Shown here: positions 11,074-55,585 of the stretch, piece by piece
Layout of the letters: each line of letters opens with the position of its first letter
Numbering within the stretch: position 1 is the stretch's first letter
Source of the DNA: Macrostomum lignano
Lineage: Eukaryota
Assembly: GCA_002269645.1 (NCBI GenBank)
Contig: NIVC01003047.1
Span: 18,129 to 82,128 of the forward strand
Direction: 5' to 3'
DNA: 64,000 nucleotides
Position numbers and translations under genes: made by a program
Notes under the pieces: generated by a model
The model's input: only the letters and a program-made list of their open reading frames with translations
What the model was told of the DNA's origin: nothing
Database searches by the model: none

Positions 11074-14000
11074 CTAACTGGTCTGGAGGCTGGCGGCGGC
11101 CTGGGCAGAAAGTTGCATCAGGCACCTGGACAGGTACTCAATGGGATCGCTGGGTCGCTTGTTGGCCACCTCCGTCAGGGCTGTCGTCAGGATGTCGTCT
11201 GGAGTGCCGGCACAATTTGCGATCAATAATGATTTTGGGTGTTTGCAGGGTGCGTATGGGGTCGGGTTTTGGTATATATGAATATTAATACCAGAATAAG
11301 AAAAAAATTATTGGTTCGATTGTTCAGGTTGAAGTTCTTGTATAGCTAGCTCTGATATACATGTGCAGTATAAGACAAAATGCAAATAGGACTCACTGAG
11401 TCGCCGTAGGTAGTCGGCATCGGTTGCGGTGGCGGCTTCACCGTCCGCAAGCTTGGCCGTGCCTACTGACTGGTCAGCAGTCAGCCGGGCCAGCGTGTCC
11501 TTTGCCGACGCGGATCCTGGCGGGATGCGGTACAGCTGGACCGGGTGGTAGCGCAGCAGGATGGCCATGTACTTGGCCGACGGCACCAGCAGCATGAAGG
11601 GCTCAGTCTCGAACAGATAATTGAACACCTGCTGGCCATCCGCTACCCGATAGGCCTGTAAAATATTTTTGTGCAGCTGAAGGCTAGGCTGAACGCGAAT
11701 CATTTAGCAATACAACTTTTACCATGTCTATACGATGAGGGCCAACCCCCAAGGCACCCAGAGTGTACATGCCTGACGATTAGAAAGTCTGGGTCGCTGT
11801 ACACCCTGCGTGTGTACGAGTGCGTGCCTGTGTACAGTACTGGCGCGCTTGTGTGCGCTCAGGTAAGCGGAATGGGCAGTAGAATTGCCTCACCGCTGCT
11901 TGTAGGACGATGTCGCCGAAGGCTTTGCGCAAGGGTGCCCGCAATCCTCCAGCGAATATTTATATATTTTAATGTACACCAAACTTACGGTTGAGGTTTA
12001 TTAAGGCATATCATTTCAATAGAATATTATTACGATTGGCTTTCCAAATCGATAACCCGGATCCAAATTCGATTGCTTCAGCGAAAAAAAACTCAGCGTA
12101 CCTGCACAGTTTTTGGTGGGTCAACAAACTCGTCCAGGCCGGAATTGTCCCCGGATGTGATTTTGATCCTGCGAGCTGGCTTGTACAGCTTGCCCACCAG
12201 CAGCTCGCTGTCCGGACTCAGCACCATCTCATACAGGATGATGGATTGGTCCGGCTTCAGATCTTTGACAAGCAGCCCTGTTTCAATGTTGAAGATCTTC
12301 AACCGATAGGTGACGCAGTGCATGCCATCGGGCAGAAGATAGAGCACCCCGGCGTCGAATGTTCGACTAAGCGACAGAGTCTTGTAGCTGGACGCATCGA
12401 CCACCATGAGGCGTCCCGGCCAGGCCATGCAGTTGCGCCGAAAGGCCTCGCGGTAAGTGTTCACTGAGCCGCTCATGAGCTGCAGCACCAGTTGTCCCGG
12501 CCTGCCAGGTCGCATATGAAGCAGCCGCGGCCTGCAGGTGTGCGAGCTCTCGATGACGACGCTGATGGACAAGTCGACGTCCAGCTCGTGGAGCAGCGAC
12601 TCCGCCGACATGTCCTCACCCAGGTAGGACTCGAGTTCGCGCAGGATCGCACCGTTCGACATGTGAAAAGCAACTGAAGCGCGGCAGCGGGCTGTCAGTG
12701 TTTCGATGAACTGCTGCAGTATTGGCAAGTACTGATAAACCTTTTCTTTGCCGCTATTCACCAGGTACTGACACACCTGCCTGGCCTCTGCGAAAACCTG
12801 CGCAATAAAATACTTGCGAGTGGAATCATGGAACTTAAAAAACGATGGTTCGGACTACCTTGTAATTTCACAGAACTGAAAAAATAACACCTATTTGTAG
12901 CAGTTTGCCACTGATCTACAGTTATATCGAAGCTCTTAAATAAATGTATGGACGCCCCTTATAAGTTTGCTGCATTGCAAAAAAATGCACTTTTCTCTCT
13001 TACCTGCAATGCGACCTCGCGCCGAGCCTGGCCAACAAACTCATCTCCAACAGTTGGTACAGGCCACGTTTTAATCCGCTGGACCTTCCGACCTAGCAGA
13101 TCCAGGCAGAGTAGATAGTCCGACAGGTCAGGTGACTCGGTTGACCGTCCGTCAAGCACGTCAGAAAGGCGGGGTGCCTGCAAATTGCCGGGGCCTCGAA
13201 CCAGAAGGTGCATTCGCGGTCCGTCTATTGCGGCGCTGACCGAAGGCGGTGTGGCCGGTAGCCAAGGCTGGTCACAGCCGTGCATGAAGTAGCCGACAGG
13301 GAAGGGGCGAACAGCAGGATGCGAGACAATGGCAAGGTGCAAGTCAGGATTCCCTAACAGATCCCTCAGGGTGCGCATTGAGCGACTGCGATCCTTTTCA
13401 GGTGGCAACTGCAGCGACTCCGGCACCTCAAAGCTGACGGGCGCCGTCGGTTGGGAAGCCAGGCGCATGACAAAAAGAAGATAGCGCGGAAGCAGTCGCA
13501 AAAACAGGCCGTGCTGCTGCAGATCCGGGAAGTTGCACAGCTGGTTGAGCTTAGAGTTCCAGGCCTCCTTAAATCGCGACATTGCGGCTAAAACTTCGGC
13601 ATCATATCCATCAACTTTGCCGTCCGGAAGAGGCTCGCGGAGCTTGGCATCTCTAGCGCCTGTGCCACCAAGGTCGGTGCAGTACATAACGCCTCCTTGA
13701 AGCCGCTTGTCGAAGTAGCCACTCCACAATGCCTGCTCGCGTGGGTCGAAAACAAAATCTGCTCGCCTCTCCTCTTTCTTTGTCACGAAATTGCTTTCGA
13801 ATTCGGACAGCTGGCCGGCCAGCTTGTTGAGGTTGAAAACCTTCAGCTGGACAGTAGACGCGTTGGCGCCGGCCTCTGGCATTGTGTTAATCACTAGATA
13901 GTCCGTGCCGTATGGCTGTCCCAGCATGATGTAGTCCGAAACGCCTCGCAAAGCCAGCAGAAAGCTGCCATCCTTGGCAGACCAGACGTTAAACGTAAAG

Positions 14001-17000
14001 TAGGCCTTGGCCTTCACCAGCAGCAGCGAGCCATCGTCGCTAATGTGCACCGGGCAATTCAGCACCGTGTGAATCTCTGCGTTTGTATCCAGTTCGTAAG
14101 ACTTGTCCAGCACACGATGATAAGCGACTGGAACCGTCTGTGGAAAATTATAATTTTATATGTTTTCAAATTTGTAAATACGCTTCTCAGTTAGCAATTA
14201 AACTCACCCGCGCAGCCTCCGGATACCACAAGAATCCAACACAGTCACCGAGCGGCTCCGACAGCATGACAACAGCAACAGAAGCCGTCCTCGATAGGCT
14301 AGTCATGAACGGCTTGTTGACGGCCGCCTCCAACTCCAGCTCGTGTCGAGCTCGACGCTCAACCTTGGGATCCAGATCAAATAGGTAGAAAGTGAACAGC
14401 GCACCTCCTGGACTCAAGGTCACCAAGAAGAGGCACTCTCCATCGTCAAAGAAACTGGTGTTCTCGCTGGTCAGCTCGTGGGCCGCCAGACCTTGCCCGG
14501 AGCAATCTAGTTCGGTTTCTTCGAATGTGTCCAGGTCCACCACCCTTGGCGTCAGTGGTTCGTCCGAAGTTTCTTCGCCCTCCGAGATGCGGTGGCCTAT
14601 GTAGAACAGGCACCGATCATTGATGAGGCTTTGCCCCAGCTGCATCGGCCAGGAGCGGAACAGGAAGTGGCGAAGCGGCTCCGATTTTAGCAAGCAATAC
14701 GTGATTGGCATAGTGGCGTAGAAAGTCTTTGCAAAGATCATGTGCCCCTCGGTGGCTTCCAAGCAGCCGCTGCCCGACTTGGCGAAGTACTGCAGCGGCA
14801 GCGAATCAGGCAGGCTAGGCATGAGAACCTTCCAGGCACCGGTGCGCATGTTTGCCCGCAACAGCTGGAACTGCCCGGGCGCAACCTCCTCGACTGTGCA
14901 GAAGCAGCCGCTTGTGGGCAGAACAGCCACGAATCGAATGTGCGATGCTGCAGGCCGCTCGGAAACCACAGTCTTTAGCTCGGACCCCTCATGGTCGTAC
15001 CAAGTGACGGTGTTGTTTTGCAGAGACACTGCGTATATCTTGCCATCTTCACACAGGTTGCCAATGGACAGGCGTACCTTCAGAATGAATTAAGTTGACA
15101 AGTTACATAGCCAGCGAGGTTTTCCCTCAAATGATATCTACGTGCGCCTTAAGATAGTGACGGCCTGACTTACCTGCACAGTGCAGTGCGTGTATCCACT
15201 ACCAGTGTCCAGGCAATTATTAACAGGCAGTAGCAGGGGACTGTCCTTCTTGCATGCCTCAAGCAGGTCGCTAATGCGTCTGGATCTAGCAGCGAATGGC
15301 TGCAAGCGGCCGCAGAGGTCCACAGGCAAACTCAGCGGACTGTGGCTCAGGCTGTACGCTGAGATGCGCAACGCGTTGTAGATCCGAGTGAGGTCGAGCT
15401 CATTCTGTTCACTGCCGCGCTCCTTCTTCTTGAGGTCGAAGAACAGATGCAAGTCCATTAGCAGCTGATGGCGCCGGCTGGAGGCCAACTTGGACTGCAG
15501 ATGATCCAGGTTAAAGGCAACGTGCTCGAGAAAGTCCACAACTCGGCCACTCCTGATGAAGTGCCTCGGTAGCTGGTTGATGCGGCGCAGGTTGTAGTAC
15601 GGCTTGTCACTCTCGACTCGAAGAACAAACGGCTGCGCTGGGACCTGCCTATCTGCGGCCATTGGCACGGGTAGGCCCTGTAGTAAATGAAATAGTTCGT
15701 CTTTACTAATTCTGTCTCACTATAAATAAACACAAAAATATTTTTGAGAATGTTTCCTACTCTGGTGATACTACGAGTAGTACGTTCGTACGGGGGTATT
15801 CTAAGTTATTTCTAGTCTAGTTATAGCTAAAATAAAGCTTTTGCATTACAAGTGAAACAAAGTTTAACATCGAAAAAGCTGAAAATTAACGAGGATTGAC
15901 ACAGCGCTCACATCTCGCTCCAATTTGGCCTTGACCCTTTCCGGACATTCAAACGGCTTCTCCCGACCGGCGGCCCACTCTCCAAAAAAGTAGTCGGCCA
16001 TTCGCGAATGAATAATCCTGTTGTGCTCTGGATCGCTGAGGTAGAGCTTTTGAGCCACCTCCCAGAATTGTCTGTGGTACCAGAATAGCACAGTGACACC
16101 GTCGGCTTCGCGCTCAACCAGGTAGTCGTCGATCTGTTGTCGAATGCGGGTCCAAGCCAACGGTGGCACGCGAATGAACGGCGGCAAGTGGTGCGTGAAC
16201 ACCTCTCGCAGGACGTCGTCATCTAGCGACAGGAGGTCCTCAATCTCTGCCTCGCTCAGACCGGTTCGGGATGCTGTCACGTAGGATAGCGCGTTTCGTA
16301 CAAGCACCTCGCCGTACCGAGTGCCAAGTTGGCTAAGCAACAGCCGAATCGCTCCTTCAACAGTCGGTTCCAGCACTGTTTTGTCTAGCGGGGTGTACGA
16401 ACTCCATCGTCGCGCCTGACGGAACACCAGGCCAATGTAGATAGGCAAAGAGCAGCTTGCAAATGCCGTTCGAAGCGCGTCCCACTGAGGCTCCGTAAGA
16501 CGGCGCTTTGACTTTTCCAGCCGCGCCCTGGTGATTTCCTCGCACAATGCTGGCTCCAGCGGTGGAACATCCATTACTCGGTCCGGTAGCAGCTGAAGAA
16601 AATTCTCCCTAATACCGTGCAGAGTTGGCAGGCAGCTTAGTATCATCTTGCAGCCTGGAGGCAGCTCGGACCTAAGCCAAGTGAGCTGGTAGGCGTAGTC
16701 GGAAGCATCAAGTTGATCGAGGGAGTCCAGCACAATGATAACACGGCGCGATTTTCCCAGCTGTTGCAGAAAATCGTAAAACGTGCTGACCAGCTCTTGG
16801 AAGCTGTCCATTCCTGCAACTTGCTGTGCCTCTGTAGAGCCAAGGAACACTGCTAACTGCTGACACAATTGCTTCACAGTCTGACGAATGCTGCTTGTGG
16901 AGGGACTGGTTCCCAAGAAGCGCAGCAATAGTAGAGCCGACGGCTGGTTATCCGGCGGTAGCCAAGAGCGAGCACTCTTGGCAGCCTTGGCCATGATGGA

Positions 17001-18998
17001 GGTCTTGCCGCAGCCGGAGCTGCCGCACAGCAGCAGCGGCTGCCTGGAGTCGCCCGTTGTGTAGTCGCGCAGCTGGTCAAGAAACTCCTTCCTGCCCTGA
17101 AAGTTGGTCACGTAGCGAACGCAGTGATGCGCGTGCTGCAAAACCTCGGCGTACAACGGGTCTGCTTGCAGCTCCGACCTGCGCTGTCTGAATGTGTCTA
17201 CGAGACGCCGGACCTGCGGGTGGGTTTTGGTAGGTTTTCATTGTTTATGGGATTAGAATGCCACAAGTTTATATTACTGGATAAGTAGATCAAACCCTCT
17301 TCTAACCGTTGAATCGTCAGCATATTTTCTCGGAATCCCCTATGGGAGCTATAGAGATCGAGATAGAGATAGAGAAATAGAGATCGGTAGAGAAATTTGA
17401 TTCAGCAACTAATCAAAGCCAAGTGTTTTACAGTCAGTACGATTTTGACTCATAACCATACACAAGCAAGGAATCGACTCATACCTGCGTCTCAAAGTCC
17501 TTAACTACGCTGTCCAGGTAATCAGCATGAACCTCGGGGCTGATACCTTTTGGAGGCTGCCATGTCAAAGAGTATTCCGTGACGCCTTTAGGCAGCAGGT
17601 CCCGCAGTCGCGATCGCAGTCCGTCCAACGCCTCGGCTGCCTCGGGATCGGCGAATCTTTGCGCCGCTTTGTCGCCCTCGTCGAGACGCTGCTGAATGTC
17701 AGTTATGTCGCGGAAGATGGCAAAGGCAAATGGCTTCAGCTCAGGATGGGCGTCCAGCACGCCCATTTGAATCTCTTGGTGCGTAATTGACGTACAGAAC
17801 CGGATAGCCCCGGCCGACGTCATTGAGCCTTTTGCAACCGCCGCATTTGCAGCGACCTTCAGCGCCTTCTGCAGCGCGGGACCATCGTGCGGCCAATCGG
17901 TCTGTTCGGCCTCGGACTCCAGTGGGCGCAGATTGTACACCGGCGGCCGGCCGTTCTCATCGCGCAGGTACCATCGATGCAGCAGGGCCAAGTCATCCGG
18001 CCTGTCGGACATGGCAGCCTCGAGTATGCCGGCCTCCTCCTCGGTGAGCCGGTTGGGCGCCTCTTTGCCGCCGTAGCGATGGCTCAGGATTGTCTATGGG
18101 GATCCCGGGGGTGTATTTTGCATCTGTTGCGCTAGTGCTAGCGCTAATCTAGACCATAGCTATTCCTTAAATTGGTCGCTCGGCCATTAGAGGGCAAAAA
18201 ATCGAAAATAAAAACTGTTGCGTTCGCAGTTAGGGAAATCATGAAATATCTGAGTGGACGGCAGGTACGAGCTATTAGACGTTTAAATTCGAACTCAACT
18301 TCGAGTACAAAGGCTGCATGGTTCGCACTTAGGAATTTCAGATGTATTGATACAACCTCGAAAATATGGAGCTATGCTAATCCTCACCATAAAATGCGGC
18401 CCACTAGAGAGGCGCTGACAGTTGAGAATCTCGTTGAAGCACATCTCCGAGGCCTTGTGATCGGAGGACGCCGCGTCCTGGATGCCCCAGCGCATGTCCA
18501 CGATCTGAAAGAATCCGTGGTCAAATTATTCTGCTTTGACTGTTTCAATAGGGAAAAAATAAATTCTTATGATTTCAATTACGCTTTTACCTGGAATTCT
18601 AGGCCATACTGATCACGGTAGAACTCCTTCATCTTGGAGTAAACAGTCTTCATCAGCGCGTTCCGTTCAACCGCCATGTCTGAAGAAAAGTTAAGAATGC
18701 GCTTTGGTCTTGGGTGCTCAAGATACATGATTACCCTCTCTACTCTGCCATTATAGATTCAATCACCTGAGAAAGTAGAGCTAATGAAAATTCTAATCGA
18801 TTTTGTGTCCTTCTTTGGCAGCTCATCCAAGTTGCCGCACAGCAAGCGCCGATAGAGATTCTCCCTGCTCTGCTCCTCGCTGATGAACATGGGCGCCATG
18901 ACCGCCGCGGCTTTAAATCGGCGAGCCGGATTGCCGTTGGGAGAACGCAGTTGAGGCGCCTTGGGGTTCGTTTTTGGAGGTCTCGCTAACCGCTTCAT
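11074..18998 (-). CDS. NWD1/NWD2-like NACHT (STAND) NTPase with an N-terminal DUF4062-like domain, a degenerate beta-propeller region and a C-terminal Dpy-30 motif, about 1978 aa. Exons: 18998-18767, 18679-18591, 18504-18388, 18093-17485, 17213-15912, 15677-15174, 15077-14208, 14137-13004, 12797-12102, 11655-11397, 11198-11074
   Basis: N-terminus IRIFISSTFSDMAVERNALM...YGLEFQIVDMRWGI; Walker A LLLCGSSGCGKTSIMAK; Walker B VIIVLDSLDQL; NWD-type winged-helix segment LSYVTASRTGLSEAEIEDLLSLDDDVL...LFWYHRQFWEVA. All 10 introns are GT-AG and the exons sum to 5937 nt in frame. Confidence 0.88.
11842..11970. repeat. Dispersed repeat of about 135 bp, copy 2, inside intron 9 of the NACHT gene
   Basis: Alignable by eye with 4694-4830. 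Confidence 0.75.
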
Positions 18999-21994: not shown

Positions 21995-22100
21995 TTGCGT
22001 AGTAGGTAAGGGGCTGAAATAATGGCCATAGACACTCGTGCGCTACGCGCTACGCGCACTCGTGTTTGGCCATTATTTCAGCCCCTTACCTACTACGCAA
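21995..22100. repeat. Perfect 34-bp inverted repeat (hairpin) with a 38-nt spacer
   Basis: ttgcgtagtaggtaaggggctgaaataatggcca (21995-22028) and tggccattatttcagccccttacctactacgcaa (22067-22100). Confidence 0.95.
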
Positions 22101-22558: not shown

Positions 22559-25500
22559 ATGACTGAGAAAGTGCGTATTCGTCAGGCAGTTAACAGAGGC
22601 GATATCGAGGCAAGGACCGAGGAGTAGTCCGTGTATCGAGGCCGTTAGGGATCACCTGCAGACGCTTCCGTCGTACCGCCACAAAGACGAATTTTGTCAT
22701 GACAGCGCGCGAACAGCAGCGCATAGTCGGCAGTGGGAAATGGTGCAGTTTCTTGCGCAGAGCATTAATGACGGGAGAAAGAGAGATACGTGCTGCTTTG
22801 AGACAGCTCAAACTGCTACAATGTGCAAGCAGTGGCCTTGGCTGAATGTTTTCGTGCAGGCAATTTCTAACCGAGAGACAAGAGATCTCTGCTGCCAGAA
22901 GATCGCACCGGATGCCGCACGCAATGAGCAGTGGGAATTAGTGAGATTTCTAGTCCAGGAAGCTGCCAATCCAACTGTGAAGGATCAGCTAAGAGCTGCT
23001 GGATCGGAATCGGCTTCAAAATTCGGCCAGTGGGATGTGGCGGAATCTCTGCTACGAGAAATCGCCAACCAGGATATTCGAGACGAATGTTGCAGCAAGG
23101 TGTTGAGAACCGCTGCAGCCAAGCATCAGTGGGATTTTGTAAGACTTGTTGCACAGTTAATTCAATGCGAACGGAAGCGAGACAGAAGCTGCGTGGAAAC
23201 AGCAAAATCTGCTGCAAAAGACGGTCAGCAGGAACTCGTTCGATTTCTAGTGCAACAAATCGGAGACCAGAGTTTGAGGGACAGGTGCTGCATGGAGGCA
23301 TCGGAAGCTGCTTCAAATGCGAAACGTTGGCCATTGGTGAGACTTCTTGTTGAACTGTTCGTCGACAGTGGCATGAGAGATCGGATCTGTGTGCATGCCG
23401 CTAAGGCCGCTTTGAGATCTGGCCAGTTGGAGGAACTGATGTTTTTCGTTGAGACAGTTGCTGATCAAAGTTTAAAGGATCAATTCTGCATTGAGGCGGC
23501 GAAATCTGCTGCCAAAGAGCGCCTCTGGCGAGCGGTCGAAGTTTTGGTGATGACAGTGGTCGATCAGCGTTTAAGAGACCAGTGCTGCAAGGATGCCGTG
23601 AAATCAGCTGCGAGTGAGTGCAAATGGGAACTTGTGAGGTTGCTCGTGAGTGCTATTTCCGATCCGAATATCAGTGATCAGTGCTGCATAGAGGCAGCCA
23701 AGTGGTCCGCAAGTGTTGGAAAACAGGAGATCGTTGAATTCCTATTTCACGCTCTAAAAAATCCCGATTCGCAAATCGCCTTCCGCCGAGAATGCGCCGT
23801 GGCGGCTTGCTGTCGTTTGCGCGAAGAATTTGTGGCTTTTCTCGGCGTTGAGCCCGATTGGCTCTTCGAATTTAGCCATGTCCTCAGCTTCACAGCTTCG
23901 ATGGCCATCGAGGGCCGAAATTCCGTTCTGAAGTCGACTCTGTCGAAGATGAATCCCGATCGAATCACCCAGCTGCTCTGTCTCTCAATCTCACACTGCC
24001 ATGTCTCACTGGCTCTAACGCTTATGGACGACGAGAGATTCAGCAAAGAGCATGTTGATGTGCCCGACAGCTCAGGAGCAACTGCGCTCATGCTAGCGGC
24101 TGATTCTGGTCACCACGAGCTCATAGATAAGCTGTTGGATCTGGGAGCGTCAGTGAGAGCTCAAGATCATCAGGGTAGAACGGCATTGACGCGAGCCTGC
24201 GAGGCGGGTCACATTAGAACTGCAAAGCTTCTGAAAGACAGGGGAGCGAAAGCGGACCATCAAGACGGCCAAGGCCTGACGTGTACGCAGCTGGCAGAGA
24301 GGCTTGGACACTCGCAGCTGCTGCGGCTGCTGTGTCCCGAGAAAGTGAGGTCAGTTCATGCACAAATATTTTCTAAGTTCGTTGCGCTCAACAGAAGTTT
24401 TATCATTCAAACTTAGGATTGACAGAAAATTTGCAAACCTTTCAGCTGTCCGCCCATCAAGAAGCCGGTCGCTCTTTCCAGAAAACCTTCAAGTTCTTTG
24501 CCTTCGTAAGTTTTTTCCGCAAGCAGCTTTTCCATGTCTTTTACTTGCCGTCGGCATAGATGTCTACGAGCGTAGAACTTCAATAGCCACAATGGCTTTA
24601 AGTGTATAGATTTAAATGATTGCCTAATATATAAAAAAGAACTTTTTCCCCATTCCAGATTCAAAGACGATGTTCAGCAGGACGAGCAGCTCAGCGAAGA
24701 GCTGCATCAACTGCTCAGCAAAGCTGGCTTCACATCTGAGAGAGCGGAGTGCCAGCAGAGAATGGCCTGCCTGCTGGAAGGAGTCGCCAAAACTCTGACT
24801 GAATATTCCCGAAAGATGACTGGCAGCTATGCGGAGGGTTGGGCTAACAGTCTGATGCAAGTCAACGGCAGGACAGCGGCTGACTCGGACATTGACTGGA
24901 CTGTGCTTGTTCGCGGACAAACGTTTCATCTTGAAGACGGATGCGGAAAATTTCGCGAATGCAATAATGTCGAAAAACTGAAGGTTGCAGAGGGTCACGC
25001 ACAGGTGACAGTAGGATCTGGTAAGAGGAACAGGGTAATGTGTAACTTTTTAGTTTTCTTGTCAAAAAGTATTGCTCCGGCCCACTTGATTCGCAGTTGA
25101 ACTTTCGCATTAGTCGCAAGTTTACCCTATCTTATTCAATCCATAGGCAGCCAGCCTGCTGTGACAGTTGGTGCATCCGGGGTGCGGCCTGCACTGGACA
25201 CGTGCCACGCCATTGAGTGCTGCAGCTCGTTCTGCGAGGACAGAATTGAAAAATTAATTAAAAACTACGGCTGGGTTCACCTCGTCAGGGCTACTCGACC
25301 GAGCTCAACCAACGAGCTCAGGGTAAGTTTCAGCTTCCAAGAGAGGGAGATCATGCGACAACTGAACACAATTCAGGGACAGCTGTTCACAATTATCAAG
25401 TTCATCTTCAAAAGGCACCTGCCGCTTAATCTCAGCACGCCCGGGCTCAAGAGCTATCACGCGAAAACGCTGCTATTTTTCATGCTGGAAAAGCACGGCA

Positions 25501-26546
25501 TGGAGAATGGAGAAGCTTGGAAACCTCAGAAACTAATCTCGCTGATCAAGGAGTCACTCAGCATGCTCCTGAGCTTCATCGATAAGAGCAATTCAGCCGA
25601 TGTGTGCATGCCGCATTTCTTCATGCCCGGCGCTCCGCTCTACTTCAAAAATGCTGGAATCGGTGGCGACTTTGACAACACGAAGGCGAGAATTCGAAGC
25701 CGACTCAGCGAACTTAGGGGCGACATTAGCGGAGTGCTTAAGCAGCTTAAGGTGCTAGTGAGACCTCTGGAATCGGAGAATTTCTACTTTCACCCCTTCA
25801 CGCTGTTGCCTCTGACGGCTTCGCCGGCCGAAATCGAGATAAGAAGCGGAATGGCCTTGCAGGAGCAGCATTCAAGGCTTGCGCGAGTGTACCAGGTGCT
25901 TCACCAGTGCTTGGACGAGCTGCAGTCGGAATCGAGCGACAGGGACACTCTGACTGGGCAACTCGGTCAGCTGGACCAGCTTCCGTCTTGCAAATACGCC
26001 GCCATGTGCCTGGCCGCCATTGTCAGCTTGCGGTTTGGAGAGACAGCCGAGTCGGAGAGAATCTTGATGGAGCTTCAAAAGCGAAGAGTCAAAAGTGGAC
26101 TTAGCCCGAGAGAGGTTCAAACGTTGGACACAGACTGGGCTTGGCGGTTCTGCCTCCCGTGTCACAATCCGCCCCACTTCCCGTTCCTGCCCGGCTTCAC
26201 GCAGTCTCTGTTCACAGCCAGACTGTCGCAGCCGAGCTCCTCTCACCTGTACGTGAACTTCCGCTGCCTGAGCTGGAGCCTCCAAGCCGAGCTGCTCCAT
26301 GATCGCAGCCCAATAGTGTTCGGTGAGTGGCTGGAAGATCTGCAAGAAGACCCGGACTTGGAGGAGCTGCTCACCCTAGCCCACTACAGCGACTGCCGTG
26401 AGCATGTGATGTTCTGCCTAGAGCAAATGGAGATTATCAGAGACGAGAGACGCGTCGCCATGGATACCCAGGACCACGAAAAGATTCGCTGCGTGACTGA
26501 GAAGCTTCAACGGCTAAGCAAGTCTCCGCAGGCACGGCGCTCTTAA
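22559..26546 (+). CDS. Mab-21/cGAS-like receptor (cGLR) nucleotidyltransferase with N-terminal 33-aa helical repeats plus ankyrin repeats and a C-terminal helical extension, about 1170 aa. Exons: 22559-22609 (requires a 31-nt GC-AG intron; otherwise the start is 22740), 22641-24349, 24659-25020, 25147-26546
   Basis: Canonical ankyrins DSSGATALMLAADSGHHELIDKLLDLGA and DHQGRTALTRACEAGHIRTAKLLKDRGA. NTase motif TGSYAEG...SDIDW and third catalytic acid DTCHAIEC. Mab-21 motifs HLV...LRVSFSFQE, LKSYHAKTLLFF and CMPHFFMPG. An alternative junction (donor 24344 with an extra exon 24426-24505) is also in phase. Confidence 0.88.

Positions 26547-54334: not shown

Positions 54335-55585
<1,251 letters not shown>

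What the first reader, a model, noticed from the sequence alone, without database searches (positions are those of the whole stretch)
22559..26546. cGAS-like receptor (Mab-21 NTase) fused to a long repeat solenoid, with catalytic residues intact
Seen in the sequence: the spliced ORF joins about 560 aa of helical repeats to a Mab-21 domain. That domain keeps the GS(xAEG) loop, the DxD (SDID) and the third acid (DTCHAI), and shows no cGAS zinc-ribbon motif. About 240 aa of helical, possibly TPR-like sequence follow. The GS-to-DxD spacer is about 20 aa, longer than the usual 9-13. Established: cGLRs make cyclic dinucleotides to signal through STING, and most are stand-alone nucleic-acid sensors. 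Inference: the repeat module may be a protein-ligand sensor or an autoinhibitory domain, which would make this a modular NLR-like cyclic-dinucleotide synthase. ANK-Mab-21 fusions may already exist in invertebrate annotations; I could not check.
Basis: partly seen in the sequence, partly recalled or inferred. Interest (0 to 1): 0.85.

Follow-up and report, generated by a model that had tools for sequence, protein, structure and literature searches.

The report
Ankyrin-fused cGAS-like enzyme gene, flatworm
This is a four-exon flatworm (Macrostomum-type) gene for a cGAS-like nucleotidyltransferase fused to a long ankyrin-repeat arm; it looks catalytically competent, but it belongs to a large family already listed in the 2023 survey of animal cGAS-like receptors, so it is a new member rather than a new kind.

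Summary
A + strand gene at 22559-26546 has four GT-AG exons. They encode about 1,190 aa in four modules:
- eleven exact 33-residue ankyrin-like repeats, each with a D-x-C-C signature;
- three canonical ankyrin repeats;
- a Mab-21/cGAS-fold nucleotidyltransferase with MTGS-X20-DIDW-X56-LDT;
- a 242-aa C-terminal domain with no detectable relatives.

Profile comparisons, an AlphaFold model of a 69%-identical paralogue and Foldseek all place it among cGAS-like receptors (cGLRs). There is no cGAS zinc thumb.

The four-exon structure, mini-exon included, recurs in a Macrostomum lignano paralogue, so the fusion is one gene.

It is not new. Li et al. 2023 catalogued ANK-cGLR fusions and cloned five M. 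lignano proteins of this family for their screen. None is marked among their 15 selected active enzymes.

The repeat arm is ankyrin, and the C-terminal domain gave no TPR match.

A 31-nt insert breaks the frame after codon 17. Either it is spliced out as a tiny GC-AG intron, or translation starts at ATG 22740, or this copy is decaying.

Enzyme activity, ligand, product and receptor are all untested. In passing: some paralogues carry a C-terminal caspase domain, and a NACHT gene lies upstream.

The parts
22559..22609 (+). Putative start codon and first 17 codons (MTEKVRIRQAVNRGDIE..). They are colinear with the N-termini of paralogues P0021 and P0041 (..GDIQALQHHL..).
22610..22640 (+). 31-nt frame-breaking piece: 22 unique nt plus one copy of the 9-nt direct repeat TATCGAGGC, with GC..AG ends. 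It is either a small insertion or transposon footprint that disrupts the 5' end, or an unusually small GC-AG intron.
   Evidence: The paralogues read straight across this point.
22641..24349 (+). Remainder of exon 1, containing the main ORF. The first in-frame ATG after the frame break is at 22740.
22683..23771 (+). Eleven tandem 33-residue ankyrin-like repeats (aa 32-394) with consensus [RK]D-x-C-C-x-E-A-A-K-S-A-A-x-x-G-Q-W-E-x-V-R-F-L-V. They are diverged (mean 31% identity) and not repetitive at the DNA level.
23772..24053 (+). Helical linker and capping region between the two repeat types (aa 395-488; conserved motif LEPDWLF..SFTA.MAIEG.NS).
24054..24341 (+). Three canonical ankyrin repeats (aa 489-584).
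   Evidence: Ank_2 1.3e-23, Ank 6.7e-20
24446..24505 (+). 60-nt mini-exon encoding part of the linker. It is in frame whether included or skipped. A mini-exon sits at the same place in the M. lignano paralogue.
24659..25020 (+). Exon 3: spine helices and the N-lobe of the nucleotidyltransferase. It holds G662-S663 (24822-24827) and D684/D686 (24888-24896), with a family-specific 20-residue loop between them.
25147..26546 (+). Exon 4: third catalytic Asp D745 (25197-25199), the Mab-21_C helical lobe (about 25419-25637), the C-terminal domain and the stop codon.
25818..26543 (+). C-terminal 242-aa domain specific to this family. It is mostly helical with small strands and carries the conserved motifs DWAWRFC, LYVNFRCLSWSLQAELL and DPDLEELLTLAHYSD. 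No relative was found outside the family.
15864..17156 (-). Neighbouring gene, not part of the protein. This ORF has NACHT / AAA_16 / NWD1-like winged-helix matches and belongs to a run of minus-strand ORFs across 12.0-18.0 kb.

Best explanation
The locus encodes one member of a large expansion of ankyrin-fused cGAS-like receptors (cGLRs), known so far from the free-living flatworm Macrostomum lignano.

Shown:
- It is a single four-exon gene.
- It has an N-terminal ankyrin-type solenoid of 11 divergent plus 3 canonical repeats.
- It has a cGAS-fold nucleotidyltransferase with a complete GS / DxD / D active-site set and no zinc thumb.
- It has a rigidly attached C-terminal domain found only in this family.

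Inferred:
- The NTase is an active, ligand-gated synthase of a nucleotide second messenger, most likely a cyclic dinucleotide.
- The ankyrin arm recognises a ligand or partner, or holds the enzyme off. Its repeat number varies from 3 to 11 between paralogues, and some paralogues carry freshly duplicated, identical units.
- The 20-residue loop between GS and DxD (the position of cGAS's activation loop) and the C-terminal domain pass that event to the active site.
- The trigger is more likely a protein or small ligand than nucleic acid. The NTase plus C-terminal unit is not basic (pI 6.3). In addition, NTase-only constructs of five relatives are not marked among the 15 active enzymes selected from a screen that used nucleic-acid ligands.
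- The downstream receptor is unknown.

This copy may be N-terminally truncated or decaying because of the 31-nt frame break.
For: Gene model and fusion:
- In-frame GT-AG splicing.
- M. lignano paralogue P0001 has the same four-exon layout, with a mini-exon and an intron inside the codon before SQPAV.
- The 39 word-search hits, all but one named as M. lignano, are colinear, and most carry both Ank and Mab-21_C domains.

cGLR identity:
- Pfam Mab-21_C is above its cut-off.
- The family profile hits cGLR1 8gjy at 1.7e-8, cGAS at about 2e-6 and MAB21L1 at only 3e-3.
- hhalign against bivalve cGLRs gives E=1.5e-19 for the C-lobe and aligns D745 with their third acid.
- For the N-lobe, E=3e-5 and score 35.1, against a maximum of 14.8 in 30 column shuffles. 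MTGSYAEGW aligns with MTGSKSEGF and SDIDW with SDMDM.
- The AlphaFold model of the 69%-identical paralogue has pLDDT 87.9 and pTM 0.89. It shows strand, GS, short helix, loop, then a strand starting at the DID residues, and a later strand starting at the third Asp. Foldseek's top hits are cGAS (E 2.4e-7, TM 0.5-0.59) and MB21D2.
- The motif fits the published cGLR definition h[QT]GS-X8-20-[DE]h[DE]h-X50-90-h[DE]h.
- The catalytic set is intact in 80 of about 97 family domains.

Ankyrin arm:
- Exact 33-residue period.
- The model of the window's own exon 1 has pLDDT 92.3.
- Foldseek's top hits are DARPins, ankyrin-B and ankyrin-1, with more than 500 aligned columns.
- Repeat number and freshness vary between paralogues.

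Link to immunity or cell death:
- Paralogues P0045, P0180 and P0062 carry a C-terminal caspase domain.
- Li et al. 2023 list these proteins among curated cGLRs.
Against: - No biochemical evidence exists for any member. The five relatives cloned by Li et al. carry no 'active' note in Table S3.
- The Pfam model of the Mab-21 NTase lobe (PF03281) does not match.
- Direct profile alignment of the N-lobe to vertebrate cGAS is not significant and mis-registers. Active-site placement therefore rests on the bivalve cGLR alignment and on a model of a paralogue, not on the window protein itself.
- The 20-residue spacer sits at the very edge of the accepted range.
- The 31-nt frame break could mean that this copy is a young pseudogene.
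- cGAS and STING are reported lost in Schistosoma mansoni, the one flatworm sampled. Whether Macrostomum has a receptor was not tested here.
Confidence: 0.6

Rival explanations
1. It is a scaffold that has the Mab-21 fold but does not work as an enzyme (as proposed for MAB21L1, or like the nucleotide-binding MiD51). The ankyrin arm and C-terminal domain mediate protein-protein assembly, for instance with the caspase-bearing paralogues, and the acidic residues bind a nucleotide or metal without catalysis.
For: No member is marked among the selected active enzymes in the published screen. The GS-DxD loop is unusually long. The Pfam NTase-lobe model is not matched. About 15% of family domains have lost one or more catalytic residues, for example P0029 with SNVN.
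Against: The full GS/D/D/D set is kept in 80 of about 97 domains, across paralogues that share only 26-35% identity. That conservation is hard to explain without selection on catalysis. The profile is closer to the active enzymes cGLR1 and cGAS than to MAB21L1, and MAB21L1 lacks most of these residues (Wu 2014).
Confidence: 0.2
2. This particular copy is a recently disabled or 5'-truncated paralogue, that is, a young pseudogene or a gene now translated from Met at 22740, in a family that turns over quickly.
For: The ATG-22559 frame stops at 22625 unless a 31-nt piece flanked by a 9-nt direct repeat is removed. Paralogues have no extra residues there. The other introns are 96-153 nt, so a 31-nt GC-AG intron would be atypical. 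No protein in the database is more than 69% identical.
Against: The remaining 1,143 codons across four exons are open and all splice sites are intact. All conserved family motifs are present. Loss of the first 60 residues would remove fewer than two of 14 repeats.
Confidence: 0.25
3. The repeat region and the Mab-21 region are two adjacent genes that were wrongly joined.
For: The only support is the 96-153-nt gaps between ORFs and the absence of RNA data for this window.
Against: Splice phases match at all three junctions. The same exon layout is annotated in M. lignano. Dozens of paralogues have the same domain order. There is no stop codon between the modules.
Confidence: 0.03

Closest known systems
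Macrostomum lignano ANK-cGLR proteins in the cGLR catalogue of Li et al. 2023 (PAA93208.1/Mlig001946g3, PAA68676.1/Mlig016402g1, PAA45980.1, PAA86972.1, PAA57558.1)
   Same: Same family and domain order: CC-type and canonical ankyrin repeats, an NTase with the 20-residue GS-DxD spacer, and the same C-terminal domain. They are 58-69% identical to the window protein for the closest members. The exon structure is the same.
   Different: The window protein has the largest number of CC-type repeats among the eleven family members examined (11, all diverged). No database protein exceeds 69% identity, so it is a different paralogue or species. It also has the 31-nt 5' frame break.
Vertebrate cGAS (e.g. 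PDB 4k9b, 4ley)
   Same: Same overall fold (Foldseek E about 1e-7). It shares the GS / acidic pair / third acid arrangement and the C-lobe motifs (WRLSFS/LRVSFS, SYH.KT).
   Different: The window protein has no zinc thumb, no basic N-terminal tail and no strongly basic surface (pI 6.3-8.0). It has a 20-residue rather than 11-residue GS-to-acid spacer, an extra C-terminal domain and an ankyrin arm.
[quoted passage not shown] 2023)
   Same: The GS-x-x-EG and SD-h-D active-site motifs align residue for residue. Fusion to protein-interaction repeats is a known minority architecture: 87% of cGLRs are stand-alone.
   Different: Different clade. The 10-residue loop insertion and the C-terminal domain were seen here only in the Macrostomum family.
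Human MB21D2 (PDB 7lt1) and MAB21L1 (5eog)
   Same: Mab-21 fold.
   Different: MAB21L1 lacks most catalytic residues and is only a weak sequence match (E 3e-3). Neither carries an ankyrin arm.

Membership tests
cGAS-like receptors (criteria of Li et al. 2023) | Active-site motif h[QT]GS-X8-20-[DE]h[DE]h-X50-90-h[DE]h | tested here: met
   The protein has MTGS-X20-DIDW-X56-LDT. The motif definition was read. The spacer is at the upper limit of the allowed range.
cGAS-like receptors (criteria of Li et al. 2023) | Sequence homology across both the NTase core and the C-terminal helix bundle | tested here: met
   For the C-lobe: hhalign E=1.5e-19 against bivalve cGLRs, cGLR1 8gjy at 1.7e-8, and Pfam Mab-21_C above its cut-off. 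For the N-lobe: hhalign E=3e-5, well above shuffled controls. The N-lobe match to cGAS alone is not significant.
cGAS-like receptors (criteria of Li et al. 2023) | Predicted structural homology to cGAS/CD-NTase | tested here: met
   The AlphaFold model has pLDDT 87.9 and pTM 0.89, and Foldseek's top hits are cGAS and MB21D2. Caveat: the modelled chain is the 69%-identical paralogue P0001, with the window exons included only as alignment rows.
cGAS-like receptors | Ligand-dependent synthesis of a nucleotide second messenger | not testable with these tools
   This needs biochemistry. The relatives cloned by Li et al. carry no 'active' note in their table.
Vertebrate-type cGAS | Zinc-ribbon thumb H(X5)CC(X6)C in the C-lobe | tested here: not met
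   A regular-expression search finds none. The profile alignment skips the cGAS thumb.
Pfam Mab-21 NTase domain (PF03281) | Match to the N-terminal NTase-lobe model | tested here: not met
   No hit at E<=1 for the full protein, nor at E<=10 for exon 3.
Ankyrin repeat proteins | 33-residue helix-turn-helix repeats that stack into an ankyrin-type solenoid | tested here: met
   Three repeats match Pfam. The eleven CC-type units have an exact 33-residue period. hhalign against canonical units gives E=8e-5. The window's own model has pLDDT 92.3. All top Foldseek hits are ankyrin proteins, with more than 500 aligned columns. Ank_2 hits in the same region of a paralogue are listed in Li et al. Table S2. 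Pfam itself does not score the window's CC units.
TPR proteins (for the C-terminal domain) | Match to TPR repeat models | tested here: not met
   No Pfam family at E<=10 and no PDB sequence match.
NLR / STAND receptors | Central NACHT or NB-ARC NTPase | tested here: not met
   The protein has none. A separate NACHT gene lies upstream on the other strand.

The most novel reading that the evidence does not exclude
The Macrostomum family could be a cGLR system that does not work through nucleic-acid sensing or STING. In this reading the ankyrin arm detects a protein or small-molecule cue. The extended activation loop and the orphan C-terminal domain gate catalysis. The output is coupled to cell death, in some paralogues directly, through a caspase fused to the same chain. 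That would be an animal counterpart of bacterial CBASS enzymes with attached effectors.
Probability: 0.15. Interest if true: 0.75.

Novelty: new member of a known kind. Interest (0 to 1): 0.35.

Why it matters
Most flatworms are reported to lack immune cGLRs, and cGAS and STING are reported lost in the one flatworm sampled (Schistosoma mansoni). Macrostomum nevertheless carries a large expansion of repeat-fused cGLRs: 92 clusters at 50% identity reach E<=1e-30, and all nine named proteins among the ten examined are from M. lignano.

If these enzymes are active, they are a tractable case for three questions: what a cGLR does with a protein-recognition arm, what ligands other than nucleic acids activate cGLRs, and what receives the signal where STING may be missing. 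M. lignano is suited to such work because transgenesis has been established for it.

For this window alone the gain is modest. It adds one more, possibly 5'-damaged, paralogue of a family that is already catalogued but not characterised.

Tried and rejected
I did not work around this. I modelled the closest paralogue for the NTase part, and the window's own contiguous exon 1 for the repeat part.
- Profile alignment of the family to vertebrate cGAS over the N-lobe was not significant. In global mode it paired the family's GS/DID with cGAS's GSPAV/VDI strand. I rejected that register because the bivalve cGLR profile aligns D745 with the third acid at E=1.5e-19 and GS/DID with GS/DMD.
- Tandem Repeats Finder sees no DNA-level repeat in exon 1. 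The repeats are old.
- Pfam gives nothing for the C-terminal domain. Foldseek's listed hits are all to the NTase part, so the fold of the C-terminal domain remains unassigned.
- There is no second family copy and no caspase exon in the window.
- The 22-nt insert sequence occurs only once in the window.
- Literature searches for STING or cGAS in Macrostomum found nothing specific. I ran no further search on STING, because the word-based search would be swamped by vertebrate sequences.
- Caspase-fused members were not found in the readable part of the Li et al. supplements. One of those files was cut when stored.
- The species of the window could not be determined.
Full report
**What is in the sequence**

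The window is eukaryotic. On the + strand, a long ORF (22740-24416) and a second one (25161-26546) are linked by two short coding pieces. With GT-AG introns of 96, 153 and 126 nt, the exons 22740-24349, 24446-24505, 24659-25020 and 25147-26546 join in frame. They give 1,143 codons and a TAA stop at 26544-26546.

It reaches the main frame only if 31 nt are removed. This piece consists of 22 unique nt plus one copy of a 9-nt direct repeat TATCGAGGC, and its ends are GC..AG. With that removal the protein has 1,193 aa. Its N-terminus (..AVNRGDIEAVRDHLQ..) is then colinear with paralogues (..SVKAGDIQALQHHLQ..), which have no extra residues at that point.

So the piece is either a small insertion that damages the 5' end or an atypically small intron. 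In the first case translation would have to start at Met 22740. RNA data are needed to decide.

**The solenoid**

Residues 32-394 are eleven units of exactly 33 residues, each beginning [RK]D-x-C-C. They are diverged (mean 31% identity) and invisible to Tandem Repeats Finder at the DNA level. Pfam does not score them, but it does find three canonical ankyrin repeats at aa 489-584.

Several results show that the whole arm is ankyrin-type:
- The 33-residue period.
- A profile alignment to canonical ankyrin units of the same family, in register (AA..G.WE.V..LV = AA..GH.EVV.LL), with E=8e-5.
- An AlphaFold model of the window's own exon 1, with pLDDT 92.3 and regular helix pairs.
- Foldseek hits that are all ankyrin proteins (DARPins, ankyrin-B, ankyrin-1), with 500-740 aligned columns.
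- Ank_2 hits over the equivalent region of the paralogue PAA68676.1, listed in Li et al. Table S2.

Paralogues carry 3 to 11 such units, and some units are 100% identical to each other. Unit number therefore changes quickly in this family.

**The enzyme domain**

Pfam finds Mab-21_C above its curated cut-off (29.6 bits, and 30.8 for exon 4 alone, against 24.1). It does not find the Mab-21 NTase-lobe model.

A profile of 17 family members matches solved structures as follows: Drosophila-type cGLR1 (8gjy) at 1.7e-8, cGAS at about 2e-6 and MAB21L1 at only 3e-3. All of these matches lie over the C-lobe.

For the N-lobe, direct comparison with cGAS fails and mis-registers. I therefore compared the family with eight bivalve cGLRs whose sequences are printed in Li et al. 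Table S3:
- The C-lobe plus third-acid strand aligns at E=1.5e-19, with window D745 (LDT) opposite their catalytic EIDIAF.
- The N-lobe alone aligns at E=3e-5. Its score is 35.1, against a maximum of 14.8 in 30 column shuffles.
- In that N-lobe alignment MTGSYAEGW pairs with MTGSKSEGF, a 10-residue insertion follows, and SDIDW pairs with SDMDM.

The motif MTGS-X20-DIDW-X56-LDT satisfies the published cGLR definition. There is no zinc thumb.

The spliced window protein could not be submitted for modelling. The NTase plus C-terminal region of the closest paralogue (P0001, 69% identical, with the window exons in the alignment) was modelled instead, giving pLDDT 87.9 and pTM 0.89. Its secondary structure is strand, GS, short helix, loop, a strand starting at DID, and a later strand starting at the third Asp. 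Foldseek ranks cGAS structures first (E 2.4e-7, TM 0.5-0.59 on the target), and MB21D2 is also listed.

In the family alignment, G, S and the first two acids are invariant or nearly so. Across 224 domain hits, 80 of about 97 with all five positions aligned read GS-D-D-D.

**The C-terminal domain**

The last 242 residues are conserved throughout the family (DWAWRFC, LYVNFRCLSWSLQAELL, DPDLEELLTLAHYSD). The high pTM suggests they pack rigidly on the NTase. They have no Pfam match at E<=10 and no PDB sequence match. 'TPR-like' is therefore not supported, and the role of this domain is unknown.

**One gene or two**

The M. lignano gene for P0001 (locus L001) has the same four exons:
- a repeat/ankyrin exon;
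- a mini-exon of about 51 nt;
- an N-lobe exon of about 369 nt;
- a last exon that starts inside the codon before SQPAV.

Its introns are 94, 78 and 64 nt. Together with the many colinear paralogues, this settles the fusion.

**What is already known**

Li et al. 2023 (PMC9980059) curated 3,020 animal cGLRs. They state that 87% are stand-alone and that some are fused to TPR or ankyrin repeats. [quoted passage not shown]

Their screen table lists five M. lignano constructs of exactly this family (rows 89-93). Row 93 is my hit P0009, and row 92 is nearly identical to P0002. All five start just before the NTase domain, and none has an entry in the column that marks the 15 selected active enzymes. 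Their domain table lists Ank_2 hits for these proteins.

The architecture is therefore catalogued but functionally uncharacterised. Wu et al. 2014 report loss of cGAS and STING in Schistosoma mansoni, the one flatworm they sampled. I found nothing on STING in Macrostomum.

**Family size and source**

The word-based search gave 39 hits, all but one named as M. lignano, with a best identity of 69%. The exhaustive profile search gave 1,845 hits at E<=1e-3. Of these, 92 clusters at 50% identity reach E<=1e-30 and span the NTase and C-terminal domains. Of ten proteins examined, nine are M. lignano and one is from a metagenome contig. No protein exceeds 69% identity to the window product. The window is therefore probably from another Macrostomum species or an unannotated paralogue. 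This was not resolved.

**How it most likely works**

Shown: the fold, the motif, its conservation, the fusion and the variability of the arm.

Inferred: it is a ligand-gated nucleotide-second-messenger synthase in which the ankyrin arm senses or autoinhibits. The trigger is probably not nucleic acid, for two reasons. The NTase plus C-terminal unit has pI 6.3 and the core alone 8.0, whereas Li et al. link nucleic-acid responders to a high pI. In addition, the arm-less relatives are not marked among the 15 active enzymes selected from a nucleic-acid-based screen.

A non-catalytic scaffold and a decaying copy are the main rivals.

**Context noticed**

- Three M. lignano paralogues (P0045, P0180, P0062) continue after the C-terminal domain into more ankyrin repeats and a caspase domain. 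The P0045 gene is compact, with introns under 105 nt. The window gene has no such extension.
- About 4.5 kb upstream, on the other strand, lies a NACHT/NWD1-like STAND NTPase gene. The P0001 locus has no such neighbour.

**Verdict**

This is a real and correctly described feature. It is an ankyrin-fused cGLR of a known, uncharacterised, lineage-specific family, so it is a new member of a known kind. Its interest is moderate to low for this locus alone and higher for the family as a whole.

Noticed in passing
M. lignano proteins P0045 (PAA59752.1), P0180 (PAA80948.1), P0062 (PAA93319.1); locus L002:3001-6651: Paralogues of the same family continue past the C-terminal domain into ankyrin repeats and a caspase (Peptidase_C14) domain. 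That puts a cGAS-like enzyme and a caspase on one chain. The P0045 gene is compact: five exons with introns under 105 nt. I found no mention of this architecture in the papers and supplements I could read.
   Followed up: partly
window 12000-18050, minus strand (NACHT ORF 15864-17156): A run of long minus-strand ORFs about 4.5 kb upstream of the cGLR gene, in divergent orientation. One ORF matches NACHT, AAA_16 and the NWD1-like winged helix, so this is a STAND/NLR-type NTPase gene. The other ORFs have no Pfam match. The adjacency is not seen at the M. lignano P0001 locus.
   Followed up: partly
window 22610-22640: A 31-nt piece flanked by a 9-nt direct repeat (TATCGAGGC) interrupts the ORF after codon 17. 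It could be a transposon excision footprint or small insertion, or a GC-AG micro-intron. Its 22-nt core is unique in the window.
   Followed up: partly
window 30530-59593: A patchwork of more than 20 unrelated tandem-repeat arrays (periods 4-46 nt, up to 2.1 kb each) with strong strand-composition skew. This fits the reported 15% simple and tandem repeat content of the M. lignano genome.
   Followed up: no
window 54506-55585, + strand: An ORF with a full-length actin match (Pfam Actin, 5e-131) lies between the tandem-repeat arrays.
   Followed up: no
window 21995-22100: A 39-nt inverted repeat (95% complementary, 28 nt between the arms) lies about 460 nt upstream of the start codon, with further copies of its core GCTGAAATAATGGCCA nearby. 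It looks like a small MITE-like element.
   Followed up: no
M. lignano proteins P0040 and P0042: P0040 has two complete NTase plus C-terminal units in tandem, separated by ankyrin repeats (comparable to OAS2/3). P0042 joins a WSC domain, ankyrin repeats, the NTase and a distant RING finger, and may be a merged gene model.
   Followed up: no
window 25197-25235 (aa 745-757, LDTCHAIECCSSFC): A Cys/His-rich stretch directly follows the third catalytic Asp. The CC pair is conserved across the family, while the other Cys and His residues are not. It is not the cGAS zinc thumb, and its meaning is unknown.
   Followed up: no
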